Positions 1 through 20,575 of a DNA stretch of 64,000 nucleotides are shown one piece after another. Within the stretch, counting starts at the first letter, position 1. Every line of letters begins with the position of its first letter. Below the pieces are notes generated by a model, which saw only the letters and a list, made by a program, of their open reading frames with translations, was not told the origin of the DNA and searched no databases. A program made the position numbers and the translations under genes. The stretch spans positions 159,403 to 223,402 of IMG/VR virus record IMGVR_UViG_3300007513_000004, one strand, 5' to 3'.

Positions 1-1056
1 GCGAATATCTTCCAGACCCTTAACGAGTCTTAATGCATATTCAATGTTCTTTTCCGGAGAAAGCCTGGCGACCATCCCAAATGCCGTTTCTCCTCTAATT
101 CCCAACTCTTTTCTTAACTCTCTGTTTTCTCTTCTTATAAAAACACTGGTATCAATTCCAACTGGCATTAAGATCTTATTTTTATCTAAAACACCAACAA
201 TATCCTTCGTCAATTCTTCGCTTACTTTGAAAATATTATCAACACCTGATCTGCTTCTTGTGTTTGCAACAGCATCACCCCAAATAAAATCACTATGGTA
301 TATCTCAACAACTTTTGCTGTTATTTTCTTGCTTTCTTTTAACTTCGAAATAACATCATATATCTTTTTGCTATTATAAAAAATAACTGTATCATAATTA
401 TGAGATATAAGAGTTGCTGATAAACGATCTAATGTTCTAATGAGCTTATGCTTTATATTTGGATTTGATAATTCAAATTCTAATTTATTTTTTGATAAAT
501 ACAAAAAATCTATATGAAACATATCTTTAGTTTTAGAGAAAATATTTTTAATATAGACTTCTCCGCCGCCATATATGCCATAGGGTATAATAACTGCAAT
601 TTTCTTATTAAAAGATATATTTTGCATATAAAGCTCCATCTGCCTAACTTCGTCCAACCGTTTCTCTTTTGGTTTTTTTATTATAGGCTTAATAATTCTA
701 TCATCACTTACGACAACTCTTCCCAATTCTATTCTTCCAAATGAATTTTTTGATCTTGATATTTCAATTATACAATTATCAATATTTTCTTTACATTCAA
801 AAGAATATTCGGACCAAGAACTTTTTGTAAACTTTATTTCTTTTTGAAAAAATATCTCTCCACTTTTCTTTTTAATATATAACTTTAATATCCCATTTCC
901 TGAAATCTTTTTACCAATTATTTTTATTTTTGCATTTTTAAAACTTAAAATATCTGTAGACAAACTTGACTTTGCAGACATTACAATGTTTTTATCTACA
1001 AAGCTAACTCCAGAAGACTTCCATTTAATATTATTATATGAATCTAATATTTTCAT
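1..1056 (-). CDS. GT-B glycosyltransferase (GT4-like), truncated at the left window edge; absent from the ORF track
   Basis: Manual translation: ATG at 1056 overlaps the upstream TGA (ATGA) and the frame stays open to base 1. It gives MKILDSYNN...KKIAVIIPYGIYGGGEVYIKN...VEIYHSD...MPVGIDTSVF...FGMVARLSPEKNIEY, i.e. the GGxE start motif, the xGID motif and the ARLxxEKN start of the second Rossmann domain typical of GT4. About 150 aa of extra N-terminal sequence precedes the GT domain. Confidence 0.85.
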   Translation of the reverse strand, partial: MKILDSYNNIKWKSSGVSFVDKNIVMSAKSSLSTDILSFKNAKIKIIGKKISGNGILKLYIKKKSGEIFFQKEIKFTKSSWSEYSFECKENIDNCIIEISRSKNSFGRIELGRVVVSDDRIIKPIIKKPKEKRLDEVRQMELYMQNISFNKKIAVIIPYGIYGGGEVYIKNIFSKTKDMFHIDFLYLSKNKLEFELSNPNIKHKLIRTLDRLSATLISHNYDTVIFYNSKKIYDVISKLKESKKITAKVVEIYHSDFIWGDAVANTRSRSGVDNIFKVSEELTKDIVGVLDKNKILMPVGIDTSVFIRRENRELRKELGIRGETAFGMVARLSPEKNIEYALRLVKGLEDIR

Positions 1057-2138
1057 AAAATATCCAAGATCTGTTTGGCCGCCCTCTCCCAGGTAAACAG
1101 CTTCACTGTTTTGTTAGACTCCTTTTTTAAACTCTTCTTTATATCTTTATAGTTCTCATATGCTTTTGTCATGGTTTCAGACAATGCATCTATATCTGGA
1201 ATATAAGTTTTGGCCCCAGGAGATGGTCTCCAATATTGATATTTGTCTGTGGCATCAATTTCTTTTACATCAACTAATAATGAATTTTTATCATTTAAAA
1301 AATCTAACTGACCAGTACACCTTGGCGCTATAACGATCATGCCTGCGGCCAAACCCTCCAGCAATGGTAGTCCAAACCCTTCAGAAGAAGAGGCGCTAAC
1401 AAGACATTCGCAAGAATTATATAACGGAACCATGCTTTCGTATCGATGCTGAACAACCTCCACCTGAGGCAGCCTTCTGCCTTTATGCTTTTTCTGTATT
1501 TTAAGAATTTCTTTAACAACATCACATTCAAACCTATATTTTGGCTCATTCAACTTTACTTTCAGCAAAAGACATACATCATCATCGTCTGTAAATGCAC
1601 TATAATATGCATCAACAAGCAAATCTATATTCTTTCTATAATGAGGTATAGAGACGTTTAAAAACTTAAATTTTCTCTTTGTCTTAAGATTATCAACTTT
1701 TGCTTTATTCTTAAAATCCTGAGGATTAATACCATGAGGTACAACTATACATTTTTCTTCTGGCCATCCGGCATTTACAAAAATCTCTTTTGAAAAATTA
1801 CTGGAAGGTAAAGCATAATCTACATGTTGAATTTCTTTTGACCAAACTTTTGGCAAAATACTTGTTTCATAATTGTAAATTGCTAATTTTAATTTAGAAT
1901 TTTTATTAAATCTATATTTAAAATTTCTAGGCAATGTATAAGTGAGATCAATATCCGCATTTATACCCTCCCTGCAAAGCTCCATCCAATCTTTTGGAAA
2001 CAAATTATATTTATTTGTACTATTTAAAAACAAATCATGGCCCATTAAGTGAAATTCTCTTAATAAGCTGCGCATAGTGACCGCCCAACTATGGGAAGTG
2101 CCAAGCATCGATTCTGCTCTAATTCTTAATGTGTCCAT
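1053..2138 (-). CDS. GT4 family glycosyltransferase
   Basis: Contains VVPHGIN, RKNIDLLVDAY and the EX7E motif EGFGLPLLEGLAAGMIVIA. Start moved from the track's 2222 to ATG 2138 (MDTLRIR...) because 2222 overlaps the upstream gene. Confidence 0.9.
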   Translation of the reverse strand: MDTLRIRAESMLGTSHSWAVTMRSLLREFHLMGHDLFLNSTNKYNLFPKDWMELCREGINADIDLTYTLPRNFKYRFNKNSKLKLAIYNYETSILPKVWSKEIQHVDYALPSSNFSKEIFVNAGWPEEKCIVVPHGINPQDFKNKAKVDNLKTKRKFKFLNVSIPHYRKNIDLLVDAYYSAFTDDDDVCLLLKVKLNEPKYRFECDVVKEILKIQKKHKGRRLPQVEVVQHRYESMVPLYNSCECLVSASSSEGFGLPLLEGLAAGMIVIAPRCTGQLDFLNDKNSLLVDVKEIDATDKYQYWRPSPGAKTYIPDIDALSETMTKAYENYKDIKKSLKKESNKTVKLFTWERAAKQILDIL

Positions 2139-2147
2139 GGTATGAGA

Positions 2148-2156
2148 ATTATACCA
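2148..2156 (-). promoter_or_regulatory. Putative extended -10 promoter (TGGTATAAT) for the glycosyltransferase pair
   Basis: Exact TGnTATAAT in the 43-nt gap upstream of ATG 2138. No -35 consensus and no Shine-Dalgarno. Confidence 0.5.
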
Positions 2157-2181
2157 AATAATGCTTTGTTTTTTTATAAAA

Positions 2182-5100
2182 CTATGGCAAATGGAAGTAG
2201 CATGGGAACGGTCCTTCGACAAAGGTTCCGGTTGCTGTACTGCCCGCTATGAAGAAGCACAGATCATCATCTTCAAAGTCTGTTTCTTCAACACACACTC
2301 CTATGCCTATTCTGCTGAGATCCTTTACACCAACCATTATATCTTCATTTCTGAATCCAGATTTCTTAAGGTGTACTCCAAATTGCAAAACCGTTCTATT
2401 TGAATCATTCAATGTATCATATAATATATTTTTGGTTTGCAATGTAGCAATTCCGGTTGTTGCGTCCAAACTGACACCAACCTTGAATATAACCCCGGTT
2501 GTTACCTCTTCATATTCTATCTCAAAAGACATCTCTGGAGATATAGACATAGCAGTCTCCGCAGAGCCGCTAGGTTCTATAATTAAAGCTTTATAAAAAC
2601 CAGGCAGATGTCCAGCTTGTGATAAAAAGTACAATGCCAAGGTAGTGATGTCAACATCTATGGTGCCGCCAGAGACTAACTCTCCAGGCTGAAAAGTAAC
2701 AACGAAAGAATCATTGTCTTCTAACGGATAATCTATTACCGTACCTAAGTTGTCTGCATTTAATATGTTATATGGAATTATATTATAATCCTCTGCACCG
2801 TCTGCAGCCGAAACAGACTCTGTCGTAGTTATAGATAATGTTGCCCCTATAACATTAGTCCTCTGTGTTAACATCAGAGGGAAGGCGACAGTGGCTCTGT
2901 TTATCAAAGAGTCAGAGTCTCTACTTATATCTATAGATGCCTCTTCCAAGTCTGACGAAGAAGAATATCCGTGTCTCATAACCAAACTATGCAATGTGCC
3001 GGTGAACTGAACTGGATAAGTTGGATATGCATATTGTGCAAGCTCAAAAGATACGCTGGCATCTCCGGCTCCGGGCTGAACGTCTGGAGTTTCTCCTATT
3101 CTTATAAACTGACCTGTTATATTGTCTGTTGAATCTATCAAAGTATCATCATAATACATTGCAAAAACAGCCTCATCAATTCTTCTTAATCTAAATATTA
3201 TTTCATCATTTAAATCATCCGCAGCATCTATAGAAAAGTCGAAATCACTTACAACATCGCCATCGGCATCGCCAAGCGTTATAACTCCATTATAAAACAT
3301 CTCTGTAGCACCACTTCCCGACAATCTCCATCCGAACTTAAGGACGGATGTTGTTTCGGCATTGGTAATAGTTATTGTCGTAAAAAATGCAATCTTTCCA
3401 TGGACAAGAGTACTGTCATCCCAAACTGTTCGCGACATTACAAAATCAATAATAAAATCACCCGATAATTCGCTGTCGATTATAGTTGGGACCGAAGGAT
3501 AATCTAGTTTTGCATATCTCTCATCAGCATTAATTGTCGATAATACAAAAACCGCTGGCTCATTTGGTCCAGAAAGTGCAGTTACAAAGGCGTCTGACGA
3601 TGGACTGTCAGAGGCATCTTGCCACTGATTAAAACCATTATCATCAGGATATGTAAAGTCTGTAAAAGACTCTGATATAACCTCTTCAGAGTCAGCGGCC
3701 TCTGTTTCGTCGGCATATCCGTCTACAGCATATCCGTCTACAAAGGCATCTACGTAAAGGCTGGAAATACACTGACTAAACTTTATTCTGCCTTTTGTCA
3801 AATCAGTTTCTGAACCAGAATCTTCGCACCCAACATATGTTCCGTCCGAAAACTTCATAGCAGGATATCCCGATTCTGTTTCGCAGGTTCCAGATTCAGC
3901 TTTTATAAAATTTGTATATAAATCAATTTGGCAGTCATCAACAGTCCCTGGAGGAAGCGGAATAGTTATCGTAGAAAACTCTATATCTCCATGATATGGA
4001 ACTCCAGGTTCCTTGTATATTTCGCCATTCGGTATAAACAAATCATTTGCCAAAACCTTTTGGTTTTTATAGATAGGAGCGCAATCGCCCTCCTCCATAC
4101 AGACTTCCTCGTCACAAACACATGATTCTTCATACTCTTCTGTAAAGTTTGTTTCCGAATATCTTCTTAGATCACATATATCAAGAAAGGTATCATCATG
4201 CGGTGCTCCAATATATGTTATTGACCAATTTTTTTCTTCAAATGGTACATTTAAAAGCTTCATATTATCGGAATAGGTATTTACCCTGGTCCCGCTTACA
4301 ATAACAACGTCCCCTAAATCACTAGAGCCAACAAAGGCTACTGCCTCTCCGTCTGTATCTGTAACGGACAACTCCACACTTACTCCGTCTGTATCTACTG
4401 TCTTGGAATATATAACATATGTGCCAGCAGACGATCCGGAAGATATTGTTATCTGATCCCCAACCCTCAGGGACAAAGCTTCATTTTCCGTCTCTACCGC
4501 AAAACTAACAGTGTCCTCTCCATCGGCTGTGGCCGGAGTGCTTAAAACGCCCCAATCGGAAAATTCTGCAGAATCAAATAGCGTTGGAAAGTCATCTTCT
4601 TCTAAAACATTTTCCAACTTTAATCTTAATACATTAAATGATTCATCTAAGGTGAAATTTACATATCCATCTATTGCATCTTCTATAAGCTCTATATCAG
4701 AACCATCTACCGTATCATCTTCGTTCAAATCAGCCTGAATAAATGTAACCAAGTCAAGCTCTCCGCCTAGAATCTTGCGCTCTGTGGTTTCTGTGTTTAT
4801 TGTGTTACCAACCACATTGAGTAACTCCATTATATCATTAGAAGTTAACTCTTTATCATTATCTAAGTCTCCAGCATACATTTTGTCGCATATGACACTA
4901 ACAATTCTATATCTAGAATTACATTCGCAATCTAAATCTGGAATAATAACTCTATTTATTAGATTTGAAGTTAACAGCTCAGAACTTGGCTCTATAAATA
5001 CGATTTCATCATTGCCAATATAACCCGGCTTGTCGAAAACTCCCGTTATATCCTGTGCTTCTCTTACATTTTTATCCTTTACTCTGGCCAATAAAACGGG

Positions 5101-6783
5101 TGGATAATCTTCATCGACCTCTGCCCACTCGTCTGCAGTCATTACTGCTACAGATGGAGCATCTTGAATTCTTGTATTAACAAAGTTTCCAGTTCTAGGG
5201 TGTGTTGCGGGAGTCTCAAAGTTATCTTGCCGCTGCAATACAAGCAGGTTTTCAGTTCCTTCCGAAACGTCACTCAATGATATATTTCTCAAAAAATAAG
5301 ACACTTCGGTACTTCCAACGTAATCAACAGTTTTTGGAAGAATTACTGGAAAACCATCTTCGGTATATGCTATACCGTCTGTAACCTCTACTGTGTCAGA
5401 GTGAACTGCAAACCAAAGTGACGAATCTGAATCATCGACATATACTAAATTATTTGGATCATATTCAAAAAATCTAGTTGTTTGCTTGTCAAAGCTTTCG
5501 AGGACGTTCAGCGTTTGACCATTATCAGTCTTTCTTGAGGGTCTGTCGTAACCTTTCTGCATCACAACCGTACCGGTCCTGTTGTCTCCCCGCCTGCTGA
5601 TAAGTACCGCATAATATTCATCAACATCTAATGATGGTTCAATATTTGGATCAGCGATTAGCGTGCCAGAGAAGTCAAAGCTTACAACCCGAGGTGTATC
5701 ATCAAGCTTGACCCCCAATGCTGCAAGATCTGCTTGAGAATATGACATCTCAATAATAGGAGAAGGGTCAGGGTCAAAGTCTATCAAGTTGTCAGGGGCT
5801 GGATCAGTTATGCAACTTATATCGGTTGATAACTTGTGAATTGAAATAACTATATCGCCTGAAAAATCATACTCAAGCCCAGAACTTGCATCCTCATCTT
5901 CCGAAACAGAAAGTAGTAAATCAATTTTTTGAATATTATTTGCTTTTGCTAAAAACTTCTGTCCATAAGTAGTGGTTTGGTCTCCATCTACTTCAAAATA
6001 AATCTCCTCTTCCGACTCTAATTCGAAATACAAATCATTAAAATTATATATAGAACCAAGACCTGTTTTTATTTCATCCTCAATAGACAAATCTGCACTA
6101 GAGGTTATAAAGTTTGCAAGATCCATATTTGGAGAATCTGTTTGAAAGGCAGTCTTCGTTCTCGCAAAGACCTTAAAGGGCTCTGCCTCTCTAAAAACAA
6201 TTTTTCCACTATCAGAAAGAGTATTTAAGCTTTCCTTTTCTAAACTATGCTCTGTCTTTCCGGTTCCTCCGGAAAAATTATTAAAAAGTACCGCTATAAC
6301 GCGTGTATAGTAATGCTCTGTAATCTTTGATATATTTTGCTTAAAGCTTATAACCTCTGAAACAAGTTCTCCAGAGTCGCTCAGGCTGCTGTATACAGTT
6401 CCAAGGATCAAAACCTTAGCTTCGATTCTACCACCAACATCAAGGCCAGAGGCCTCGACCTCTATTCTGTTTCCATAAATAATATCACTGGGCTGCCTAT
6501 CTAAATAGATAGCCCTTCCATCATACTCGCCGGAATCTATAACAAATTCTGATTCATTCTCATCATCACTGCTGTCCAAATTACCCGCAGGATCGCTCGT
6601 ATCTAATAAAACACGGCTTTCAAACAAGCGATCTCTTATGATTCCGCTTCCATGAAAATCCTTTGTTAAATTAGAAACTAAACCCCTATGGTGAATTTGT
6701 TCAGCATCTAAATCAGCCTCTGTTATTCTTTGGCCGTCAAAGAAATTTACTCTGGGAAGTTTTTCTCTATTAGCCTTTGCCAT
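2182..6783 (-). CDS. Large baseplate-associated fibre/structural protein (1533 aa) with an internal dockerin/EF-hand-like loop pair
   Basis: N-terminus PRVNFFDGQRITEADLDAEQIHH resembles the RxNFFxGQxLTxxDLxxEQ anchor of contractile-system fibre proteins. Lies directly after the wedge gene, is acidic and beta-rich, and has SD-like AGGAG upstream. Confidence 0.6.
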   Translation of the reverse strand: MAKANREKLPRVNFFDGQRITEADLDAEQIHHRGLVSNLTKDFHGSGIIRDRLFESRVLLDTSDPAGNLDSSDDENESEFVIDSGEYDGRAIYLDRQPSDIIYGNRIEVEASGLDVGGRIEAKVLILGTVYSSLSDSGELVSEVISFKQNISKITEHYYTRVIAVLFNNFSGGTGKTEHSLEKESLNTLSDSGKIVFREAEPFKVFARTKTAFQTDSPNMDLANFITSSADLSIEDEIKTGLGSIYNFNDLYFELESEEEIYFEVDGDQTTTYGQKFLAKANNIQKIDLLLSVSEDEDASSGLEYDFSGDIVISIHKLSTDISCITDPAPDNLIDFDPDPSPIIEMSYSQADLAALGVKLDDTPRVVSFDFSGTLIADPNIEPSLDVDEYYAVLISRRGDNRTGTVVMQKGYDRPSRKTDNGQTLNVLESFDKQTTRFFEYDPNNLVYVDDSDSSLWFAVHSDTVEVTDGIAYTEDGFPVILPKTVDYVGSTEVSYFLRNISLSDVSEGTENLLVLQRQDNFETPATHPRTGNFVNTRIQDAPSVAVMTADEWAEVDEDYPPVLLARVKDKNVREAQDITGVFDKPGYIGNDEIVFIEPSSELLTSNLINRVIIPDLDCECNSRYRIVSVICDKMYAGDLDNDKELTSNDIMELLNVVGNTINTETTERKILGGELDLVTFIQADLNEDDTVDGSDIELIEDAIDGYVNFTLDESFNVLRLKLENVLEEDDFPTLFDSAEFSDWGVLSTPATADGEDTVSFAVETENEALSLRVGDQITISSGSSAGTYVIYSKTVDTDGVSVELSVTDTDGEAVAFVGSSDLGDVVIVSGTRVNTYSDNMKLLNVPFEEKNWSITYIGAPHDDTFLDICDLRRYSETNFTEEYEESCVCDEEVCMEEGDCAPIYKNQKVLANDLFIPNGEIYKEPGVPYHGDIEFSTITIPLPPGTVDDCQIDLYTNFIKAESGTCETESGYPAMKFSDGTYVGCEDSGSETDLTKGRIKFSQCISSLYVDAFVDGYAVDGYADETEAADSEEVISESFTDFTYPDDNGFNQWQDASDSPSSDAFVTALSGPNEPAVFVLSTINADERYAKLDYPSVPTIIDSELSGDFIIDFVMSRTVWDDSTLVHGKIAFFTTITITNAETTSVLKFGWRLSGSGATEMFYNGVITLGDADGDVVSDFDFSIDAADDLNDEIIFRLRRIDEAVFAMYYDDTLIDSTDNITGQFIRIGETPDVQPGAGDASVSFELAQYAYPTYPVQFTGTLHSLVMRHGYSSSSDLEEASIDISRDSDSLINRATVAFPLMLTQRTNVIGATLSITTTESVSAADGAEDYNIIPYNILNADNLGTVIDYPLEDNDSFVVTFQPGELVSGGTIDVDITTLALYFLSQAGHLPGFYKALIIEPSGSAETAMSISPEMSFEIEYEEVTTGVIFKVGVSLDATTGIATLQTKNILYDTLNDSNRTVLQFGVHLKKSGFRNEDIMVGVKDLSRIGIGVCVEETDFEDDDLCFFIAGSTATGTFVEGPFPCYFHLP
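3713..3742. repeat. 15-bp tandem duplication (gcatatccgtctaca x2) encoding VDGYA VDGYA
   Basis: Read directly from the sequence. Confidence 0.9.
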
Positions 6784-6840: not shown

Positions 6841-9800
6841 TTAGCATGGTTCTCTTGGGAATTTTATCAATGCATTCGAATGTGCAGGCTTTAATCTATC
6901 GACAAGTTCGACTATCAAATCCTCAACTTCATCACTGTTAATCTTACCAAAATTATCCGCTACTTCTATATCAAAATTAAAGATACCTTTTGAGGGGTCA
7001 ACAACCGTTGCATAAAAGTCCTCTTCACTTTCTTGTTCAAAATTCAACATAAGAGTTGTTGCATCGTCTTTAACCACAGGCATGACGGTATCTGTATTAG
7101 ATGAATAATTTGGATCAATATAATCTCCTGCAGGATCTTTAAATGTGCTTCTCATCGTTCTGCTAAATCTTATATTATCCATTCTAGATAATGCCGACTT
7201 TCTTTCAAAAGCATCAGACCCAACGCATACTAGTCTAAAATCATCTCCAAGCTTTATATTATAATCTATTTGTCTAGAGGCACCTTCTTGTTGTGTGGTT
7301 TGCCCATAAACAAACCCTGTACCATATATTACGCCTTCTTGACCATATGTTATGAACCCACTTTCAACCCCATCTACAAACAGCCTCATCGTATCTGATG
7401 CCGAATTTGTCCTATATGTACACATGACTCTATGCCAAGTGTTTCTATTCCAATCTATATCTTTACATATTATATTTGTACTACCATTTGCAATTATTGA
7501 GAAAACAATCTGACTTCTCTCGTTTTTATAAACAGACACCCTGTCTCCGGATAAGCTGCGCGGAATATACGAAACAAGCACATCAACCTTCGATCCTGGC
7601 AAAGCATCTGTCAAAAAGAGTCTTTTTCCGTCTGCGGAAAGCTTGCTTCCTATCGAAAAGTCCTTTTCAATTCCCGTCCCGCCTGTAAGCCGACCTGTTG
7701 TTTCGCTTCTATAGATTTCATCAAATAATATTTTATCTATTTCATCCTGAGAATAAAACTCTGAAAATTCTTGAGAATCTTGCAAAAGCTGCACACTAAC
7801 AACTTCCTTTGCCGGAGTTGGCAAATCAATTATCGTTGGAGAAAAAGATGTAACTCGCTTTCTGGTTACCGAATAAATATCAACATAATATCTTTCAACC
7901 TCATCTCCGATTGTATCTAAGACTGGACTTATCCAAAACTCAATCGTTCCTTCTTTTCTTCTAAAATAAGAAAGCCTATTATTTATAACTAAAGGCTGTG
8001 TATTAAAGAATCTTGCTGATAATCCAAAATTATCATTAACGCTGTTTTCGCTAACCAACATATCATCGCTTCTAATCAGCTTCGTCTCATTAAATAGCGG
8101 CCCATCTTGTGCATAATGACATTCAATATAAGCCTCTATAGCCGTATCTTTATCAAAGCCCATACGAACCATTGTTGATACAAACATATCTTCATCATTA
8201 ATATACTTTAAAAGCTTCTCTCTGTCTTCCAAATCAAGTTTAAATTTAAAATTACTCTCTGTATTTAAAAACTCTTTTTGCCTTAATCTTCTTGACTGAA
8301 GAGCTATTGGGTCATCAAAATGAATCAATGCAAGAGTCTGATCGTCTGGACAGTGTGGATTCGGATTCAGAAAATCCTCTGTAACACTTCTCGTTCCATC
8401 TGTATCACTTTGTGTAGGCCGTGTATCGCTAGACATCTCCGTTATGATTCTAAACTCATCTATGGTTCCGCCAAATTGGCCCGCTTCATTCCTATCACAC
8501 CCTATATAAAGATGATCCCCAACCTTTGGTAGTTTTATATTTAAAAATGCAGGATAATTCAGATAATAATCACCAGGATGTAATTCAAACGGATAAAACC
8601 CATTGGATCCAGCTGCAGTCAAAATAAGGCTTCCATTTGAATATTCAAATACCTCTGCATATTCTCCGCCATTATCTGAAACTGTAATTGGATTCGTCTC
8701 AATAAGCTCTACAACATACGGCTCATAATCTGGATCTGCCAAATAAATCTCTCCAACCATTTTTGATACAGATTTAAATAACTTCTTACCCTTTATTGTT
8801 CCGTTTCCTCTTATGGAAAAGACCTCCTCATCCGTTCCGTCTATAGTCTCTCCATATACTGTAATCTTATTTGTATAGATATCATCCATGTAACCTTCGG
8901 GATATCCTTCTATATCTTTTTCGCAAAAAGCTGTATTGTCTGAATCAAATTTGATCGATAAATATCTGCCCAAATTTTTCTTATAAACCTGAACTGGTTG
9001 ACAAATAAGCAGATGATGACCATCATCACCCTCTAGGTCTATTTCAAAAATTGACCGATGCAAAAAGTCTTCCTCCTCCACAATGCTGTCTAAAGTAGGA
9101 ATTGTTCGCGGCAAAACAATCCTTCTTACCGTAACATCTTCCAACGATACTGGCTCTGCAGCGTGGGCCAAAATAACACTCTTACCGCTCTTTACATCAT
9201 ACGGCTTCTCATCAAGCCTATAATATGAAGAACTAGATAAACTTATTATATCATTACAATTTGCATAAACCAAACCAAAGGTTTCTATGTGAATATTTAG
9301 ATCAGAAAAATCAATCGTACTATTAAAGTTGCAATCAGCATCCTTTCCGACAAACTCTACCACCTTTGTGGCTATATTAACCCTATATTGTGGATTTATA
9401 ACATTTTCACCGCTCACAATACTTATTGATCCACCATCTACGGTGTATAATATCCCGCCCAACTCTGTTTCGTTACCTTCGCAATCTGTTCTAAATATTG
9501 CAAAAGAACTATTTCTAAAATCGGTCGCTATATCTTCTTTGATTCCTGCGGTTGGGGGAAACATAAACTTTATATCAGAAGCAGAAGCGTCAAACGTAAC
9601 CGTATCCAAGCTTAACCCGCTAACAAAAGTGACATCATCCCCGTCAACGCTGTTTATAATAAACTCCTGACCAACATATGATGCGGCCACAGTTGACTCC
9701 AGGAAGATTATAGACCTTCCTACCATCTCTTGAGAGAAGCCGGCCTTACTTGACGTAAAAGAAGATGAATCAGCCAAAATTGTTCCATCTGTAAAAATAT

Positions 9801-12800
9801 CACAAAACTCTATATTATCAACAAGGAAGTCTTGAAGCATTTCTTTGCTAACATCTGAAAATTTATCATTTATCCTAACCGGGACTGGTCCGCCAAACTT
9901 ATAAATATTTGGAGCTTCAAGGCCATCTACGAATAAATGCATTTCATCTTTTTCATAAAGAGTATTTAGCCTCCAACTTGCAGATATATGATGAAGATCT
10001 CCTGGCTCAAAGTCTTTTATGTTTGTCGCAATATTATACATATTCACATCACCTCTTGAAGTCTGTGAATTATCATAAATTCTGAAATTCATAAATCCTT
10101 TGCCATCTTTAAATATTGATATTCTATTTTCAGAATCACTTTCGCCGCTATCAAACAAGTATCTTAATTTATCCGATGTAAAATAAACTTCGTCTACATC
10201 ATATTCTGATTCTGATGCATATCCATAAGCATCAGCATATCCATCTTCATCACAATCCATATACCCATCGGCATAAGCATCAGCATATCCATCTGCCTCT
10301 CCAATTACGGATAAAGAAAATTCAATTTTAGAATCAGTACTTATAAAGATATCTCCATCCTCTAAAGTTGTAACCCCATCTTCGTGTCGTCCACTAAACT
10401 CTATAAGGCCTATATCTATAAGGTTTCCAGAGTAATTATCATGAAAATTATTTGCATCAACCAAGGATCCATCAAGCAGGTGTATTCCCAAGAAAGGCTC
10501 ATTTAATATTTCGCATTCATCTATATCTTTTGATGAAAAATCATCAAAAGTAAGCCTGCTCAAGACAAATGTATCAGATTCTATTGTTATTATCTCGTTT
10601 TCATAATCTTTTGACAGAATAAGACTATCAAACAATCCTACATCCCAATTCATATAGGCTATATCCACTATATCGTTGGTATGGCCGTCTAGAACCAAAA
10701 CCAGCGGCTGCCCTGCATCACTTATTGCTAACGCAACCTTTATATTTAAAGCATCATCATAAACATGTATTGGAACAATACCCGTCATAACTCCAGATAC
10801 CGCCCCTTCAAATCTATCCGATGAAGAGGTTAAAATATCATAATCTAATTCTGACACCTTAAACGAAACCGTTACAGAATAATCTCCACCATGACATGGG
10901 AGTCTTGTGTATACAAAGTTACCATCTGATTCGGCATGATTACAGCTTTCCACATCATAAACTGATGGCCCCATCCGATAGACTCCGCCACTCTGAATAG
11001 TATCAAAGCCTCCATGCTTCATCCAGAGAGATGACTCAGTTTCTGTGCCTCCAAGCAATATGTTTATTAAATCCGAACTTGTTTCGTCAAGCTTTCTCCA
11101 CCCGCGCCCTGGCTCTTTTCCGTCCAAAACTCCATCGCCGCAATATCTATACTCCGCAGAGCAAACAAGGCCCGTTGGGCATCCCGACCCATCCTCATTC
11201 CTGTGCGCTCTTACTACAGATGAAAATTCACCATCTGTATTTATAGTTCCTGAAAAAGTATGATCTATTGGAACATCCGAATAGACAAACTCATAATCTC
11301 CGCCCGAGCCTCCGGACGCCTCGCAAACCCCTATTGGAACATTTACCGAGTTTCCAGCCCTGGTCCTAAAGACCCATTGACCAGCGTCTTCTGCTAGCGG
11401 AGATAAGCACAATTCGTCAAACCCTATAAAAACACCCTCTGAAGAATCTGAGTTGTACGGCAATCCAACCGACGTATCCGGGAAATCATACTTGTTTACC
11501 TCAAACGGTACACCTTTAGGGCTTCTTGCTGCAGCGCCAATATAAATATCATTTTCATTAAACCTATTATATATTGAATACTTCAACCTTCCTATATCCA
11601 CTATAGACTTTGCAGACCTATCTAGCGTTCCTGCTGCAATCTTGCCTGATAAAGCACTAGAATTATGAACAGAGCTTATGCCATCAGCTGTATTAAACCA
11701 TTTGTCAATATTAAAGGCTTCATAAATAACATCCTCTTTATCAACCCCGATAAGATCAGTATAAAATAGCTTTATAGTCTTTTTCTTAGGCCCAACAGCG
11801 CTATTTACAACAATCTCTACCAAATTATTCAAAGGATCCCTTGTAAACTTTAGATCAACAAAATCTGACATCCAATCTAATATGTAGCTTTTTGCTTCAT
11901 ATCCTAAATACTTTGTAGATTCTGGATTAGCATTTGTAAGAATGGATGCAGTCTGATAAAGCACTGTTATTTCGCCAGTTGGCAGCAGTGTATTTATTGC
12001 GGCCGAACCTTGTGCTGTCACATATTGTTGATTATCTGGAATTCTATTTATTATGAATCCAGACACAGAATCTGGAATTCTGCCTTCTACTGTATTTCCA
12101 TCTTCATCTAGAAACGCATATACTTCATATATCGCACCGCGAGTATCTAAAATTCTAAAAGCAGATGGACGATCATCAAACGCGACATCTACATCGCTTA
12201 TATATGAAAATGGTATACTAAAGTCTAAATCAATCGTAATAGACTGGAAATTCTTATCTCTAAATTTAGACAGCTCCTCAAGAGTGTCGTTGACTTTGCA
12301 GCTACAATTTCTTGTAGTATGCAGCCTATCATAAGTTGGTATTTCATTACTCTCTATATGCTCATACCCAACTCTAAATGTATATATTCTTCCACTTTCC
12401 GGATTGCATAATGGTCTTAATGAAAACAGCATAAACAGCAATTTATTCGTATCTCCCATAGATATAAACGCTGGGCTGCTAAACCTAAGAAGGTCTAATT
12501 CGCTACCCTCTGCCAAGAGGCCTCTAGAGGAGTCAGACATGGATCTTCCGAGTCCAAGGATACCCAAGGATGCCTTATTAAACGCAATGTCCTCAGAGGG
12601 CTTTCTGCGTGGAGGGTTTATTACTTCTGGGGCAGAAAAATTAGACACCTTTAATGATATGTCCATCTCTGTTTTTACAATCCTACTGATAGAATCTTCT
12701 TGTTTGACCAAGACAAAAGCACCAATGCTTTCTTCCTCTTCCCCTCCTCGCTCATCAACCCAAGAGCTTGTATAGTTATGCAGAGTTATGCTTGGAAGCG

Positions 12801-15800
12801 AATTGTCCACCCCTCCTATGACATGATCTGAAGCCAAAACCCCAAAATTATTATCATAATTAAATGGATTGGTTCCAAGTTTGTAAACATAATTTTTGGT
12901 ACCAATATTGTCTATATCTATAGTTAAAGTTGCATCATTATCAATTCCGGCCCACTCCGGGCAAATCCATGCCGAAAGCGTTCCTTCGCTCAAATTAATA
13001 TTCGAAAGAGAAGGGGTCTGTATAACGATATCGTCATTTATCATAACCCCCTCATTAAACTTGCAGGATTTAAACTCCAAAATTCCATCTGCACTCAATG
13101 TTCCGGGGTGTAAATAATCTCTGCCCAAAATCCAGCTTCCAAATACAGACTCTGTAATCTCAGGGGTTATGTCTGTAAAAGATTTTATCAAAGACTTAAA
13201 AGAAGGTGTGGTTGGCCCGTTTGTAAAGGCTTGCATCGTTCCCGCTAAAGCATTTCTATAAAGCTCTCTATCTGCAGTTATTGGAAATCTTTGAAAAAAC
13301 GGAATCTTAGTTAATATTCCAAAATTTTTCTTCAAAGCATCTCTCAATGCTCCAAATTTGTATGTAACAAAATATGTTTCACCCTCTGATATTGCACTTC
13401 CTATGGACCAATCTACTTCATTATCTCCATACTCATATGAAATATAGATATCGTCATATGAATATACATAGCCAAGGAAAAGCCTGCCAGCCCTGAAGTC
13501 AACACCAACTTCGGTTCCTATCTTCGGAACAAAGGTGGTCTTGTATATAACCTCAACTGGATCACCAGAATTAACATATGAGTCGGCCGGAATAGTGATT
13601 GTGATTCCAGAATCAGCTTTGTCCGTCTGAGCCTTAACGATAACCTGGGCGCTGCCCAAGTCTGGCGAATCTGCCTCAACATTATTCTCTGCTGGAACAG
13701 AAACTGTTATATTGGATAATTCTGCATCAAAACCTGTTATCGCAAATCGACTGCCTCCTTCGTCTAGTAAGAAATCTCCATCAAAATCTATGTCGTCCAG
13801 AATGGGGCCTGACTTTATTTCTACAACAACTTCATCGCCCGATTCTTCTGCAAAAACTATCTCTAAATCATCTATTTTAACAACATTTAATTTATCATTA
13901 AAAATTTCAGAACCTGTTGGCGTATGTATTATTTTATAAATTTCGTCAAATTCAGAATCATTTATTGTAATCAAATAATCATCACCACTACTAAGTAACC
14001 TTGTGCTATAACTCTTTTTTAAGTCTATAACATTATCTTCAAAAGACATAAATGTAGTATCAAAGATATTTCCGCCACCGTCTTTTACGAGCTCCTTTAC
14101 AACGTCTGACCCCAAGTCTTCAAGCCTACTAGCCTCTGCTTCGTAGGTTAACCTTGACCCCTCTAAGAGCCCCGTTGAGTACACCCCGTTTACCTCAGAG
14201 ACTTTCATGGGCAAGACCACTGTAAAGTCATCCAAAACAACACAAACATCTTGAAGGTTTCCATTAAAATCTATGGCCGTAGTTTCTCCGTCCGGAAGCA
14301 AAACAGTATTTTCTAAATCAAGTAAAGAAATAGTGCTGCTAGTATTTGATGGCTCATCATAAATTTTTGTAGCATCTTCCAAAGTATCTGAAGAAACTAA
14401 CTTCTTCGAAGCCTCTACAATACTTATTATATTGGTATTGAAAGGCGTAATTGAATTATAATTATAGTTAATATAACCTAATTCATAATCTTGATCATAA
14501 GATGTTGCCAAATAAACCTGGCCATGCCTATAGTCTACACAGTAATCTCCAACTTTGCGCAAACGAGATAGGTTTTCAAAAAAGCCTTCTCCTTTTGACG
14601 ATAATATTTCAGAAGTCAAACTATCATCCGAAGCTCTGCTCACTCCTGGGTTTGAATTAATATCCCCAAAGTACTTCTCTCTTGCAAAAAGATCTGTTTT
14701 TGTAAATTCAATTGATGTATTTATATACGATCCAATTGCATCTCCTGAGCCATTTATAATATAATTATTATCCAAGCTAAAGGCCAACCCCTTTGGACCT
14801 ATAGTTACATCTTCATTCAAACTTGGCGCTGTAGCTGTAGAGTTTATAGACACTGAGCTGATCAGGTTGTCAGAATCTGGCGTTCCAAAAAACTTAATTT
14901 GTAAATCTTCAATATCATCAGAGCCGTCTAACCCCGTACTTCTTATGAAATAATCTTGAGAATTTTGATCAATTAATTCAGCAGGAATTCCCGGTGAGAA
15001 TTGAATACTGCTATTAGACGCATTTGCTGTTATGGTTATAGAAAATGTTGGACAAACAAATTCTCCAATTGGCTCTAATCTTTCCAACTCTATTAAATCA
15101 AACTTTGCTAACTCATTCTCTTCTGTCCTGAACTCTGGAGAACGAGAGCCTGTAAAGTAAATCTCATCCCTTGTATTATATAGAGGCAGATAAACCTCTC
15201 CAGTTGTTTGGTTAAAAACTCTAAATACATTTGTTACTGGCGTATTTTGTGGACTTATGATAAATGAAGATACAAAATTATTTTCTACATGCTCGTTAAA
15301 TACCTCTGTATGGCAAGGAGCTCTGTAATCAACATCCTCGACATAGACCTTATCGTAATTAAAGTCTATATTTACACCTTCTCCAACTAAGCTTCTGTTG
15401 CTTGCGGCAACAAACTCATTATCTTTTATATAAAAATCTAGATTTCTAGAAAATGAATTTCTATATAAATATTCTGCAACATTATTATTAGACCCAGTGC
15501 CATCCCCGATCTCTTCGGCTCCGACCACTATAACCTCTCCTGTTGCATAATTTACTGCAAACTCACCAACTCTAGAAGGTAACTTTGAAGCATTGAAAAC
15601 AAGCTCTAACTGAAACTCATCTGGAATTTCTGATAAATTCTCTCCTGCCTTAAAAGCTATACCGCCCGTCTCTGGTATTTCATTTTCATAATTTACTATT
15701 GGAGCGTTTTCTAAGAAAAATCTTGTAATATTGGTAGGAATAGACTCTGTTTCGGCTTCTTTAAGATTATATACTTCTATTGAATTTTCATTAACGTCTA

Positions 15801-20135: not shown

Positions 20136-20143
20136 TATTACCC

Positions 20144-20575
20144 CTAAGCAATCCTTACCGTAATATTATCCCTTACCTCTGTAAGTTCTTGTGTTAATAC
20201 GGAAACAAATATATTATAAAGCCTTGGATCAACATCATCTCTTGCTACCGATATCTTGACTATATCCATAATAAGTTCTCCAGGAGACATATTCTGCCTT
20301 CTGGCCTGAGACCTCTGAAGAGACATAAGGTTTCTAACAGCAGTTCTTGCTGAAGACTCAAGATCTAGAGAAACTAATTTGTTATCTGCATGATGCCCTA
20401 TTCGCAAAGCCCCTATATAACTTCCATATTTTGGATGAAACTTATTATCACCAAGCTCTGTTAATAGTATTTTAATAATATCTTGACGCAGCTTTGCATT
20501 GCCATTTACTGTTTTTACAGAGCCACTAACTCCTATTTTAATATCCCCTCTTTCAAGGGCTAAATCAAAAGACAT
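20144..20575 (-). CDS. gp25/gpW-like baseplate wedge, sheath-initiator protein
   Basis: 143 aa. LRQDIIKILLTELGDNKFHPKYGS matches the gp25-like LxTxxGxxxxxPxYG pattern. Immediately before baseplate J. Confidence 0.85.
   Translation of the reverse strand: MSFDLALERGDIKIGVSGSVKTVNGNAKLRQDIIKILLTELGDNKFHPKYGSYIGALRIGHHADNKLVSLDLESSARTAVRNLMSLQRSQARRQNMSPGELIMDIVKISVARDDVDPRLYNIFVSVLTQELTEVRDNITVRIA

What the first reader, a model, noticed from the sequence alone, without database searches (positions are those of the whole stretch)
1..2138. Two GT4 glycosyltransferases at the end of the tail/baseplate operon: candidate virion-glycosylation system
Seen: two coupled (ATGA-overlap) GT4 genes sit co-oriented, 43 nt after the last fibre-like gene. 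The second is invisible in the ORF track and carries an extra N-terminal domain of about 150 aa. Known: some actinobacteriophages glycosylate capsid/tail proteins with their own GTs, and giant eukaryotic viruses glycosylate fibrils. Inference: these enzymes decorate the giant Ser/Thr/Asp-rich tail proteins. DNA or host-surface modification are alternatives.
Basis: partly seen in the sequence, partly recalled or inferred. Interest (0 to 1): 0.72.

Follow-up and report, generated by a model that had tools for sequence, protein, structure and literature searches.

The report
Huge marine phage's sugar-coating gene cluster
The two sugar-transferring enzymes are real and are the first genes of a much larger, phage-encoded sugar-chain factory that sits right after the tail-fibre genes in a whole lineage of huge ocean phages; it most likely coats the virus particle with sugars, but what it actually coats is not yet shown.

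Summary
Two active-looking GT4 glycosyltransferase genes, joined by an ATGA overlap, lie 43 nt after a 1533-aa fibre-like gene. The second gene runs off the window's left edge. Its extra N-terminal domain is a CBM-like beta-sandwich.

The pair is only the start of a locus. The window is the last 64 kb of a 223-kb marine virus record. About 18 kb further along the same strand lie at least eight more glycosyltransferases, nucleotide-sugar enzymes, two sulfotransferases and a GT4-tubulin fusion, followed by the endolysin.

In 24 of 24 related phage loci with enough downstream DNA, GT-A follows the fibre gene. Most keep the order fibre, fibre, GT-A, GT-B, GT-C, GT-D. Between this block and a conserved distal block (GT4, GT2, GT4/tubulin) lies a glyco-gene island of very variable length and content.

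Neither this record nor four near-complete relatives encode the first enzyme of a lipid-linked pathway or a ThyA-like or C5-methylase route to glycosylatable DNA. No flippase- or polymerase-like membrane protein was found in this record or in one complete relative.

Best reading: cytoplasmic glycosylation of virion, probably tail-fibre, proteins (about 0.45). Main rival: remodelling of host envelope glycans through host machinery (about 0.3). No acceptor is demonstrated. I class it as a new variant of a known kind.

The parts
1053..2138 (-). GT-A, a 361-aa GT4 glycosyltransferase and the first gene of the array
   Evidence: Pfam Glycos_transf_1 E 2.4e-11, 43.9 bits against a cut-off of 26.4. 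The EX7E motif E253...E261 is invariant in 17 homologues. The best solved relative by profile is chlorovirus NY-2A B736L (3oy2, E 1.5e-8). GT-A follows the fibre gene in 24 of 24 related loci.
1..1056 (-). GT-B, residues 1-352 of a 507-aa GT4. The gene continues 467 nt beyond the window's left edge (genome 158,935-160,458).
   Evidence: Translation. The full-length protein scores 90.2 bits on Glycos_transf_1. E403...E411, R331 and K336 are invariant in 35 homologues. The AF2 model has pLDDT 87.8 and a GT-B fold that matches BshA, HepE and MshA with TM 0.75-0.79 normalised to the target.
697..1056 (-). N-terminal beta-sandwich domain of GT-B (aa 1-120), with a carbohydrate-binding-module-like fold
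   Evidence: The AF2 model of the domain alone has pLDDT 93.7. VIA-align gives Z 12-13 to CBM36, CBM15, CBM4 and CBM16. Foldseek gives E about 1e-5 to CBM4, CBM22, CBM29 and CBM6. The domain is unique in this genome. It is the most divergent part of the protein, with 35% mean column identity against 45% for the whole protein.
610..696 (-). Disordered linker of GT-B (about aa 121-149)
   Evidence: pLDDT is 42-55 for residues 121-150.
1053..1056 (-). ATGA overlap between the GT-A stop and the GT-B start (translational coupling)
   Evidence: Read from the sequence. The same 4-nt overlap is kept in most related loci, where GT-A ends at 10004 and GT-B starts at 10001.
2139..2181 (-). 43-nt spacer between the fibre-like gene and GT-A. 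It contains TGGTATAAT (window 2156-2148), 9 nt before the ATG.
   Evidence: Sequence. No terminator-like site lies here. A GTAtAAT-like element sits 6-10 nt before the GT-A start in about 11-13 of 17 phages. TGGTATAAT has 7 hits on the minus strand, 4 of them in the 9% of the genome that is intergenic.
2182..6783 (-). 1533-aa fibre-like protein (pI 4.05), always immediately upstream of GT-A
   Evidence: No Pfam or PHROG family matched. It lies after the baseplate wedge and the 3319-aa protein. Full-length homologues of 39-71% identity occupy the same place in relatives. pI.
6841..16800 (-). 3319-aa giant tail protein with a C-terminal Laminin_G_3 (ConA-like lectin) domain
   Evidence: Pfam Laminin_G_3 E 5e-11 at aa 3085-3163. 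It is syntenic in all relatives.
16809..20575 (-). Baseplate wedge genes (gp6-like 1108 aa, gp25-like 143 aa) that fix the context as a myovirus tail module
   Evidence: phrog_6 E 8e-44 and phrog_2669 E 3e-13. The sheath lies at 43686-46928.

Best explanation
GT-A and GT-B are the first two enzymes of a phage-encoded, cytoplasmic glycan-assembly line that a whole lineage of huge marine myoviruses carries directly after its tail-fibre genes.

Shown:
- In this phage the line has at least 8 confident and 2 probable glycosyltransferases. They are GT-A to GT-D, E314, F225, one GT2, one GT4, one GT2 and a GT4-tubulin fusion.
- It also has enzymes that make unusual sugar donors: a Gmd-like GDP-mannose 4,6-dehydratase, a TviC/GalE-like epimerase, a short NDP-sugar dehydrogenase and a cupin.
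- It has two sulfotransferases and a PP-loop enzyme (DUF6395).
- All of these proteins are predicted to be soluble.
- GT-A to GT-D are conserved in the main clade, and GT-A extends to the deepest relatives found. The distal block is conserved in the few relatives examined. The genes between the two blocks turn over fast.

Inferred:
- Soluble Leloir transferases build a phage-specific, lineage-variable oligo- or polysaccharide step by step, from nucleotide sugars, directly on a soluble acceptor in the infected cell. In this phage the glycan is probably acidic and sulfated.
- The most likely acceptor is a virion protein, above all the very acidic fibre proteins encoded next door.
- GT-B's CBM-like N-domain would hold the growing glycan or the acceptor.
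- The glycan coat would then act in adsorption, shielding or stability of the particle.
For: 1. Enzymology. Pfam scores are above the cut-offs and the EX7E motifs are invariant. The GT-B fold is modelled with confidence.
2. Locus extent.
3. Linkage. In 20 loci found through GT-B, the order 3319-aa protein, 1533-aa protein, GT-A, GT-B, GT-C, GT-D is kept (GT-B 30-61% identical), except where a locus ends first; GT-D is separated by an insert in three loci. Among 33 loci found through the fibre protein, all 24 with enough downstream DNA carry GT-A after it, including a distant clade. Translational coupling is conserved.
4. The locus lies between late functions: tail fibres on one side and an Amidase_2 endolysin on the other.
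5. Core status. GT-B has more than 240 full-length homologues on contigs of up to 420 kb. Gmd and the GT4/tubulin pair are conserved on the same contigs.
6. No membrane steps. None of the 20 locus proteins has a convincing predicted transmembrane helix; one has a single borderline hydrophobic segment. No polytopic membrane protein was found in the 223 kb or in a complete 335-kb relative. No Bac_transf or WecA-type initiating transferase was found in this phage or in four 94-100% complete relatives.
7. No DNA-acceptor route.
8. Viral affinities. The best solved relative of GT-A is a chlorovirus glycosyltransferase. Its nearest relatives in isolates are paired, ATGA-coupled glycosyltransferases of Streptomyces phages. 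The best viral structural matches of GT-B are giant-virus GT1 proteins, aligned over more than 500 columns.
9. Precedent. Virion glycosylation by phage glycosyltransferases is established in mycobacteriophages Che8, Corndog and Myrna (as summarised in PMC12363180, and PMC12619734).
Against: - No acceptor is identified, and no ORF on the strand that carries the tail and glycan genes has an S/T-rich tract or tail like the mycobacteriophage acceptor sites.
- The catalytic domain of GT-B is closest to GT4s that act on undecaprenyl-PP-linked glycans, lipids or small molecules, such as O-antigen and EPS enzymes, PglA, PimB, BshA and MshA.
- The sugar-pathway genes are those typical of O-antigen and capsule loci: Gmd, uronic-acid enzymes, and NeuB, Kdo8P synthase and CMP-transferases in relatives.
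- All the transferases are basic (pI 9-10), as peripheral membrane glycosyltransferases are. This is confounded by the low GC of the locus.
- Conserved order is expected for many core genes of a phage lineage, so synteny alone is weak evidence for a shared function.
- A conserved -10-like element before GT-A means that co-transcription with the tail genes is not established. The same element precedes early-type genes such as UvsW and Hc1.
- None of the listed RNA runs held the stretch.
- The GT-A/GT-B complex prediction gave no answer.
Confidence: 0.45

Rival explanations
1. Host-envelope remodelling. The soluble phage transferases dock on the inner face of the host membrane. There they extend or replace host undecaprenyl-PP-linked (or lipid A-core) intermediates with phage-made sugars. 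The host's own initiating enzyme, flippase, polymerase and ligase then export the altered glycan. The cell surface changes as a result, which could exclude superinfecting phages, mask receptors on debris or deter grazers. This is the role usually proposed for the LPS-like genes of cyanomyoviruses.
For: - The structural and sequence neighbours of GT-B are O-antigen, EPS, Pgl, Waa and Pim enzymes.
- The pathway genes are typical of O-antigen and capsule loci, and the island turns over the way serotype loci do.
- The transferases are basic.
- This is the published reading for the 13-glycosyltransferase cyanophage S-SCSM2R, for P-SSM2 and S-SCSM1, and for marine jumbo cluster PGC_C.
Against: - No initiating phosphoglycosyl transferase was found in this phage or in four near-complete relatives, and no flippase, polymerase, ligase or GtrA/C-like membrane protein was found in this record or in one complete relative.
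- The glycosyltransferase array is a core trait with a fixed position next to the fibre genes, not an accessory island.
- The locus is flanked by late functions. A surface change that depends on late expression would come late in a lytic cycle.
Confidence: 0.3
2. Another soluble or non-virion acceptor. The line builds a free or secreted polysaccharide, a glycosylated small molecule, or glycans on non-structural phage or host proteins. One example would be a matrix at an assembly site organised by the phage tubulin, to which one GT4 is fused.
For: - GT4 enzymes such as BshA and MshA, which act on small molecules, are among the top matches.
- The GT4 and tubulin genes are adjacent in three complete relatives. 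They are fused in this phage, in a 94% complete relative and in at least 75 protein clusters.
- All proteins of the locus are predicted to be soluble.
Against: - No exporter is encoded.
- A small molecule would not need about 10 transferases.
- The fixed position after the fibre genes is left unexplained.
Confidence: 0.12
3. DNA hypermodification. The transferases attach sugars to hydroxymethylated bases of the phage genome to evade restriction, as in T-even phages and the recently described 5hmC-glycan gene clusters.
For: - Multi-sugar DNA glycans made by successive phage glycosyltransferases of GT-A and GT-B fold exist (bioRxiv 10.1101/2023.12.21.572611).
- The transferases are basic.
- DNA modification is listed as an option for the glycosyltransferases of large aquatic phages.
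Against: - No ThyA-family hydroxymethylase and no C5 DNA methyltransferase was found in this record, in its near-identical twin (ThyA family only), or in four 94-100% complete relatives.
- Known DNA-glycan clusters sit beside such genes.
- No T4 alpha- or beta-glucosyltransferase appears among the listed sequence or fold matches.
- The locus sits between the fibres and the endolysin, not in a replication module.
- Sulfotransferases and about 10 transferases are without precedent for DNA.
- The Tet_JBP search was uninformative because its control did not ring.
Confidence: 0.04

Closest known systems
Virion glycosylation of mycobacteriophages (Che8, Corndog, Myrna; Freeman et al. 2023, as cited in PMC12363180 and PMC12619734)
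   Same: Both are phage-encoded soluble glycosyltransferases placed with the structural genes. In both, the glycans are thought or shown to be built in the cytoplasm directly on virion proteins.
   Different: - Those systems have one to a few glycosyltransferases, and the modification sits on capsid and tail-tube C-termini. Here there are about 10 transferases, phage-encoded nucleotide-sugar synthesis and sulfotransferases.
- No S/T-rich acceptor tail was found here.
- No Mycobacterium phage appears among the tblastn hits of GT-A or GT-B.
- The host here is probably a marine Gram-negative bacterium.
- The acceptor here is unproven.
Giant-virus glycosylation machinery (chlorovirus glycosyltransferases such as B736L, PDB 3oy2; glycosyltransferase clusters of Mimivirus-like viruses that decorate fibrils; the second from my own knowledge)
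   Same: - Both are virus-encoded sets of many glycosyltransferases with their own nucleotide-sugar pathways, including Kdo and nonulosonic-type genes in relatives.
- Gene content varies between clades in both.
- The best solved relative of GT-A is B736L.
- The best viral structural matches of GT-B are Fadolivirus, Tupanvirus, Yasminevirus and Catovirus GT1 proteins.
   Different: - This is a tailed bacteriophage, not a virus of eukaryotes.
- The similarity is distant (E 1e-8; 12-17% identity).
- The function of B736L is itself only putative.
LPS and cell-wall gene clusters of large cyanomyoviruses (P-SSM2, S-SCSM1, S-SCSM2R; PMC12801897) and of marine jumbo cluster PGC_C (PMC9123017)
   Same: These are marine myoviruses with up to 13 glycosyltransferases, NDP-sugar epimerases, KdsA and KdsB. 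Their function is likewise unproven.
   Different: - Those clusters are read as host-surface or DNA modification.
- No homology to them was seen in the searches of the phage collection.
- Those papers, as read here, do not report a fixed position after the fibre genes, a four-GT4 core array or a GT4-tubulin link.
Moraphages, a lineage of large aquatic phages with four glycosyltransferase orthogroups in the core genome (PMC12619734)
   Same: Both are jumbo myoviruses with gp6 and gp25 baseplate genes, UvsW, an Hc1 histone-like protein (present here) and four core glycosyltransferase groups whose function the authors left open.
   Different: - Moraphages are mostly freshwater, 200-307 kb, and the paper does not mention tubulin.
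- Complete relatives of this phage are marine and 316-395 kb, and they encode tubulin.
- Membership could not be tested because their sequences are not held here.
- The paper does not describe the fibre linkage, the variable island or the N-domain.
GT4 enzymes with an added beta domain: TarM (teichoic acid) and GtfA/Gtf1 (serine-rich adhesins)
   Same: Both are GT4 catalytic cores of about 500 aa with an extra all-beta domain. GtfA works with a partner encoded next door and glycosylates a protein in the cytoplasm. TarM and Gtf1 are among the PDB sequence hits.
   Different: - Their beta domain (DUF1975) is inserted within the N-terminal Rossmann domain (from my own knowledge).
- Here the beta domain is a separate N-terminal CBM-type jelly roll on a flexible linker, and no DUF1975 hit was found.
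- No GT-A/GT-B complex could be supported.
Phage DNA glycan hypermodification clusters (bioRxiv 10.1101/2023.12.21.572611)
   Same: Successive phage glycosyltransferases build variable glycans.
   Different: Those clusters sit beside C5-methyltransferase plus 5mYOX, or beside ThyA-like genes. None of these was found here or in complete relatives.

Membership tests
CAZy GT4 / Pfam Glycos_transf_1 (retaining, GT-B fold, Leloir type) | Profile match above the curated cut-off | tested here: met
   GT-A scores 43.9 bits and GT-B 90.2 bits against a cut-off of 26.4.
CAZy GT4 / Pfam Glycos_transf_1 (retaining, GT-B fold, Leloir type) | Two-Rossmann GT-B fold | tested here: met
   For GT-B, the AF2 model has pLDDT 87.8, and Foldseek matches BshA, HepE and MshA at E about 1e-17 with TM 0.75-0.79 normalised to the target. 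GT-A was not modelled and is supported by sequence only.
CAZy GT4 / Pfam Glycos_transf_1 (retaining, GT-B fold, Leloir type) | EX7E motif in the C-terminal domain | tested here: met
   In GT-B, E403 and E411 are invariant in 35 sequences. In GT-A, E253 and E261 are invariant in 17 sequences.
CAZy GT4 / Pfam Glycos_transf_1 (retaining, GT-B fold, Leloir type) | Transfer from a nucleotide sugar with retention of configuration, and a defined donor and acceptor | not testable with these tools
   This needs enzyme assays.
Phage virion-glycosylation systems (mycobacteriophage type) | Glycosyltransferase genes placed with the virion structural genes | tested here: met
   GT-A lies 43 nt after the fibre-like gene, and it follows the fibre gene in 24 of 24 related loci with enough downstream DNA.
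Phage virion-glycosylation systems (mycobacteriophage type) | Glycans demonstrated on capsid or tail proteins | not testable with these tools
   No virions and no proteomic data are available.
Phage virion-glycosylation systems (mycobacteriophage type) | Recognisable acceptor segment (S/T-rich terminal extension) on structural proteins | tested here: not met
   A scan for 30-aa windows rich in Ser and Thr hit only short ORFs on the + strand, opposite the tail and glycan genes (likely spurious), and two repeat-rich proteins. The composition of the fibres is ordinary for S+T.
Phage virion-glycosylation systems (mycobacteriophage type) | Sequence relationship to the mycobacteriophage glycosyltransferases | tested here: not met
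   tblastn of GT-A and GT-B against 50,697 phage records gave no Mycobacterium phage hit. GT-A hit Streptomyces and Rhodococcus phage glycosyltransferases at 28-29% identity.
Phage DNA-glycosylating systems (T4 alpha/beta-glucosyltransferases; 5hmC-glycan clusters) | A route to a hydroxylated base (ThyA-like hydroxymethylase, or C5-methyltransferase plus TET-like oxygenase), usually adjacent | tested here: not met
   No PF00303 or PF00145 match in this record or in four 94-100% complete relatives; the near-identical twin was searched for PF00303 only. The controls rang. The Tet_JBP search was uninformative.
Phage DNA-glycosylating systems (T4 alpha/beta-glucosyltransferases; 5hmC-glycan clusters) | Similarity to T4-type DNA glucosyltransferases | tested here: not met
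   None appears among the listed PDB matches (best 60 shown for GT-B, all 12 for GT-A) or the 50 best fold matches.
Lipid-linked surface polysaccharide loci (O-antigen, capsule, EPS) | Several glycosyltransferases together with nucleotide-sugar synthesis genes | tested here: met
Lipid-linked surface polysaccharide loci (O-antigen, capsule, EPS) | Initiating phosphoglycosyl transferase (WbaP/PglC or WecA type) | tested here: not met
   No PF02397 or PF00953 match in this record or in four near-complete relatives. The controls rang in 9 and 12 of 14 genomes.
Lipid-linked surface polysaccharide loci (O-antigen, capsule, EPS) | Flippase, polymerase or ligase, or ABC exporter (polytopic membrane proteins) | tested here: not met
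   A hydropathy scan found no protein with 8 or more segments in the 223 kb or in a complete 335-kb relative. No locus protein has a convincing predicted transmembrane helix; one has a single borderline hydrophobic segment. The scan is crude and used no family profiles.
Serotype-converting gtrABC of temperate phages | Membrane proteins GtrA and GtrC with a GT2 GtrB | tested here: not met
   No such membrane proteins were found. Integrase and other lysogeny genes were not searched for.
Moraphage lineage (PMC12619734) | Phylogenetic placement with the 25 described genomes | not testable with these tools
   Their sequences are not held. Shared traits are four core glycosyltransferases, Hc1, gp6 and gp25, and UvsW. 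Differing traits are marine habitat, 316-395 kb genomes and tubulin.

The most novel reading that the evidence does not exclude
A cosmopolitan lineage of huge marine phages coats its tail fibres with a phage-made, clade-variable, acidic or sulfated glycan. A conserved four-GT4 core next to the fibre genes starts the glycan, and a fast-turning island finishes it. One transferase is physically tethered to the phage tubulin cytoskeleton, so glycosylation is organised in space at the assembly site. The coat serves as bait or mimic for host glycan-binding surface proteins, or as a shield. This would be a bacteriophage counterpart of the glycosylated fibrils of giant viruses.
Probability: 0.12. Interest if true: 0.9.

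Novelty: new variant of a known kind. Interest (0 to 1): 0.68.

Why it matters
If the glycan ends up on the virion, it would extend phage virion glycosylation from a few actinobacteriophages with one to three transferases to a widespread group of huge ocean phages. These phages invest 20-45 kb in a complete, self-supplied and rapidly diversifying glycan factory, on the scale of giant eukaryotic viruses.

That would bear on several questions:
- how such phages find hosts
- how they persist in seawater
- how they escape recognition
- why their genomes are so large

If instead the glycan goes to the host envelope, it would be a core, lineage-defining case of surface reprogramming by a lytic phage.

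Either way the locus has a clear anatomy: a conserved fibre and four-GT4 block, a variable island, and a conserved GT4/tubulin block. That makes the question testable. The GT4-tubulin fusion links glycosylation to a viral cytoskeleton, and I found no paper describing such a link.

Tried and rejected
- Complex prediction for GT-A with GT-B (coupled genes, by analogy with GtfA/GtfB) scored 0.00 and gave 'no answer', so it counts neither way.
- Transcript evidence was sought. No listed RNA run holds the stretch, and three metatranscriptomes from the study of the best DNA holder laid nothing. A DNA run covers it in one piece.
- Sigma-70 promoter matches in the locus are at chance level (80 found, 78 expected). 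Terminator-like sites number 18 against 9.6 expected, but none lies in the spacer.
- A Bacteroidota-type TAnnTTTG motif, checked by eye, was inconsistent and was dropped.
- The GTATAAT-type element also precedes UvsW, Hc1 and a gene with a Nudix-like N-terminal motif, so it does not define a late class.
- The scan for S/T-rich acceptor tracts found nothing in ORFs on the strand that carries the tail and glycan genes.
- Charge is ambiguous. The transferases have pI 9-10 and the fibres pI 4.0-4.4, which fits a membrane, DNA or an acidic protein as partner, and it is confounded by the low GC of the locus.
- GT-A's match to the Pfam family 'GT4-conflict' is below the cut-off (21.9 bits against 26) and was not used.
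- The Gmd search was meant to hint at the host. It returned only lineage homologues without organism names.
- A scan of one genome per prokaryote species found only two weak hits in MAG contigs. The GT-B family therefore looks phage-specific, within the limits of a pattern-based scan.
- Moraphage membership could not be settled.

Full report
WHERE THE WINDOW LIES

The window is the last 64 kb (159,403-223,402) of a 223,402-bp IMG/VR virus record that CheckV rates 67% complete. A near-identical 221,878-bp contig also exists. Near-identical DNA occurs in marine and seawater metagenomes from several studies.

Most genes, including all those discussed here, lie on the minus strand. GC is 0.39 overall but 0.32-0.36 across the region discussed here.

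CHECK OF THE OBSERVATION

GT-A:
- It occupies window 1053-2138 and encodes 361 aa.
- The ORF list shows a 389-aa TTG ORF, but sixteen homologues start at the Met encoded at 2138.
- Pfam Glycos_transf_1 scores 43.9 bits against a cut-off of 26.4.

GT-B:
- It starts at 1056 and overlaps the GT-A stop by ATGA.
- It leaves the window after residue 352, which is why the ORF tool does not list it.
- In the full record it is 507 aa, and Glycos_transf_1 scores 90.2 bits at aa 312-426.

Context:
- The spacer to the 1533-aa ORF is 43 nt.
- PHROG hits fix the context as a myovirus tail module. These are the sheath, a gp25-like protein and a gp6-like wedge.
- The 3319-aa protein carries a Laminin_G_3 lectin-type domain.
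- The fibre proteins are very acidic (pI 4.0-4.3). They are not unusual in Ser or Thr, and no ORF on the strand that carries the tail and glycan genes has an S/T-rich tract.

Two points need correcting: the phrase 'Ser/Thr/Asp-rich' overstates the composition, and the pair does not end the gene array.

THE ENZYMES

Thirty-five full-length GT-B homologues keep the following residues:
- E403 and E411, which form the EX7E motif
- R331 and K336
- the N-terminal GG motif

Seventeen GT-A homologues keep E253 and E261.

An AlphaFold model of GT-B (pLDDT 87.8) has three parts: an all-beta domain at aa 1-120, a disordered linker up to about aa 150, and a canonical GT-B fold.
- The fold matches BshA, HepE, MshA, PimB', PglA and WaaG.
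- In Swiss-Prot it matches O-antigen and EPS GT4s.

Modelled alone, the N-domain has pLDDT 93.7. It is a jelly roll of the carbohydrate-binding-module type, with Z 12-13 to CBM36, CBM15, CBM4 and CBM16. A shared fold does not prove sugar binding. The domain is unique in the genome and is the fastest-evolving part of the protein.

The best solved relative of GT-A is the chlorovirus NY-2A glycosyltransferase B736L. Its nearest relatives among isolates are paired, ATGA-coupled glycosyltransferases of Streptomyces phages. The best viral fold matches of GT-B are giant-virus GT1 proteins.

WHAT LIES BEYOND THE WINDOW EDGE

On the same strand, tightly packed, follow these genes:
- GT-C (373 aa, GT4)
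- GT-D (310 aa, GT4)
- E314, a weak GT-B-type match
- F225, GT2-like by the protein atlas
- a GT2 (317 aa)
- a PP-loop DUF6395 enzyme
- a short NDP-sugar dehydrogenase (262 aa)
- a TviC/GalE-like epimerase
- a Sulfotransfer_2 protein
- a Gmd-like GDP-mannose 4,6-dehydratase
- a Sulfotransfer_3 protein
- a 294-aa protein of unknown function
- a cupin
- a 494-aa protein with a weak LysM match
- a GT4 (318 aa)
- a GT2 (238 aa)
- an 824-aa GT4-tubulin fusion
- an Amidase_2 endolysin
- a UvsW helicase

GT-A to F225 overlap each other by 1-8 nt.

RELATIVES

GT-B has more than 240 full-length homologues (30-92% identical) in marine metagenomes, many on contigs of 200-420 kb.

Linkage seen from the GT-B side:
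- Twenty loci were reached through GT-B.
- The order 3319-aa protein, 1533-aa protein, GT-A, GT-B, GT-C, GT-D is kept wherever the DNA reaches, although GT-D is separated by an insert in three loci.
- The 4-nt GT-A/GT-B overlap is mostly kept.

Linkage seen from the fibre side:
- Thirty-three loci were reached through the 1533-aa protein.
- All 24 with enough downstream DNA carry GT-A after it.
- This includes a distant clade with only 29-32% fibre identity.

Downstream of GT-D the content changes from phage to phage. Relatives carry the following where this phage has its sulfotransferases and neighbouring genes:
- NeuB
- CMP-sugar synthetases
- Kdo8P synthase and SIS
- DegT
- methyl-, acetyl- and pyruvyl-transferases
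- extra GT4s

The distal end is conserved again in the relatives examined. It consists of the short dehydrogenase, epimerases or Gmd, the cupin, a GT4, a GT2, GT4/tubulin, the endolysin and UvsW.

The distance from GT-B to the tubulin gene varies between phages:

| Phage | Distance from GT-B to tubulin |
|---|---|
| This phage | 14.5 kb |
| Four near-complete relatives | 24, 34, 36 and 40 kb |

In a complete 335-kb relative with terminal repeats, most of the interval consists of recognisable glyco-related genes, including a sulfotransferase.

DISCRIMINATING TESTS

DNA glycosylation needs a hydroxylated base.
- No ThyA-family enzyme and no C5 methyltransferase was found in this record, in its twin (ThyA family only), or in four 94-100% complete relatives.
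- The controls rang.
- Known DNA-glycan clusters sit beside such genes.

Lipid-linked surface polysaccharide synthesis needs an initiating phosphoglycosyl transferase and polytopic export proteins.
- No Bac_transf or WecA-type enzyme is found in the five genomes.
- No locus protein has a convincing predicted membrane helix; one has a single borderline hydrophobic segment.
- Neither the 223 kb nor the complete relative encodes a Wzx-, Wzy- or WaaL-like protein.

The phage therefore encodes the soluble steps and none of the membrane steps that were searched for. That fits a soluble acceptor, but it also fits reliance on host machinery.

Co-transcription with the tail genes is not established.
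- A TGGTATAAT element lies 9 nt before the GT-A start.
- Similar elements are kept in about 11-13 of 17 phages, and they also precede UvsW and Hc1.
- None of the listed RNA runs held the stretch.
- The GT-A/GT-B complex prediction gave no answer.

INTERPRETATION

The anatomy is shown. It is a conserved array of four GT4 genes next to the fibre genes, then a variable glyco-island, then a conserved distal block.

The acceptor is inferred. I rank the readings as follows:
- Virion-protein glycosylation comes first, at about 0.45. The reasons are the fixed fibre linkage over deep divergence, core status, the flanking late functions, the absence of membrane and DNA-route genes, the viral affinities of the enzymes, and precedent in mycobacteriophages.
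- Host-envelope remodelling through host machinery comes second, at about 0.3. The enzyme neighbours and pathway genes are those of O-antigen and capsule loci, and this is the usual reading for cyanomyovirus clusters.
- Other soluble acceptors get about 0.12.
- DNA glycosylation gets about 0.04.

LITERATURE

- A 2025 paper on 'moraphages' lists four glycosyltransferase orthogroups in the core genome of large aquatic phages and leaves their role open. It describes no linkage to fibre genes, no island and no tubulin.
- The marine jumbo-phage survey does not mention glycosyltransferases.
- None of the phage-tubulin papers listed in the search mentions a glycosyltransferase.

I therefore rate this a new variant of a known kind, of real interest but unresolved.

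Noticed in passing
outside the window: genome 141,964-144,438 (-) = L002:8965-11439 (-), about 15-17 kb left of window position 1: This is a single 824-aa ORF. It fuses a GT4 domain with an intact EX7E motif (Glycos_transf_1 45 bits) to a tubulin/FtsZ/TubZ-like GTPase. The tubulin part scores 46.6 bits on Pfam Tubulin, its best PDB match is RepX (4ei7, E 1.7e-15), and it carries the GGGTGS signature. The fusion is conserved in at least 75 protein clusters at 51-93% identity. In three complete relatives the GT4 and the tubulin are two adjacent genes. None of the phage-tubulin papers listed in the search mentions a glycosyltransferase.
   Followed up: partly
window 22748-30964 (-): A 2738-aa protein has five hydrophobic segments clustered at aa 1694-1810 and matches no family. 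It is a likely tape-measure protein. The moraphage paper reported that no tape-measure gene could be found in that lineage.
   Followed up: no
window about 4684-4878 (-), aa about 636-700 of the 1533-aa protein: Two conserved Asp-rich loops of the DxDxDG type, spaced like a dockerin or EF-hand calcium-binding pair, appear in the consensus of nine homologues. They were seen by eye only, and Pfam gave no hit.
   Followed up: no
outside the window: genome 152,281-153,069 (-) = L003:7282-8070 (-): A 262-aa NDP-sugar dehydrogenase lacks about 30 N-terminal residues and the whole C-terminal domain of the family. It is nevertheless conserved at full length (54-64% identity) in at least five relatives, so it is a shortened form that has been kept, not a pseudogene.
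   Followed up: partly
window 1-2200 and genome 144,000-162,000: The whole glycan locus has the lowest GC of the record, at 0.32-0.36 against 0.39 overall, and its transferases are Lys-rich with pI 9-10. This could reflect foreign origin or different constraints.
   Followed up: partly
window 2148-2156 (-) and 31005 (-); genome 130,909 and 83,109: TGGTATAAT occurs 7 times on the coding strand, and 4 of these are in the 9% of the genome that is intergenic. In three cases it lies 9-10 nt before an ATG with no Shine-Dalgarno sequence, which suggests very short or absent leaders.
   Followed up: partly
outside the window: genome 27,614-27,739 (-): A histone H1-like Hc1 gene (PF07432, 46 bits) is present. 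This trait was reported for the complete moraphages. Among the 14 control genomes the family rang only in Bacteroides, which is a faint hint of a Bacteroidota host.
   Followed up: no
L007:2351-3085 and L007:13573-14433 (relative on a 96-kb Logan contig): ORFs with faint LAGLIDADG matches are inserted between the two fibre genes and inside the glycosyltransferase array of one relative. Other relatives carry small ORFs or an endolysin between the fibre gene and GT-A.
   Followed up: no
outside the window: L003:5721-6350 (-) and L003:3917-4723 (-); relative L072:9627-11740: There are two sulfotransferases here. A complete relative has a Sulfotransfer_1 protein next to a sulfatase-family protein. 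Among phage records the only matches are two uncultured phage records (462 and 484 kb) and Ralstonia phage RSL1. PAPS supply was not checked.
   Followed up: partly
protein hits P0006 and P0167: Homologues of GT-B and of the GT4-tubulin fusion are filed in NCBI under 'Candidatus Pacearchaeota archaeon' MAGs (CMI47_03225, CMI41_04790). These are probably phage contigs binned with archaea.
   Followed up: no
L028:18841-22436 (relative, 348-kb Tara scaffold): A PrkA, DUF444, SpoVR gene trio lies downstream of DnaB in a relative, a few kb beyond the glycan locus.
   Followed up: no
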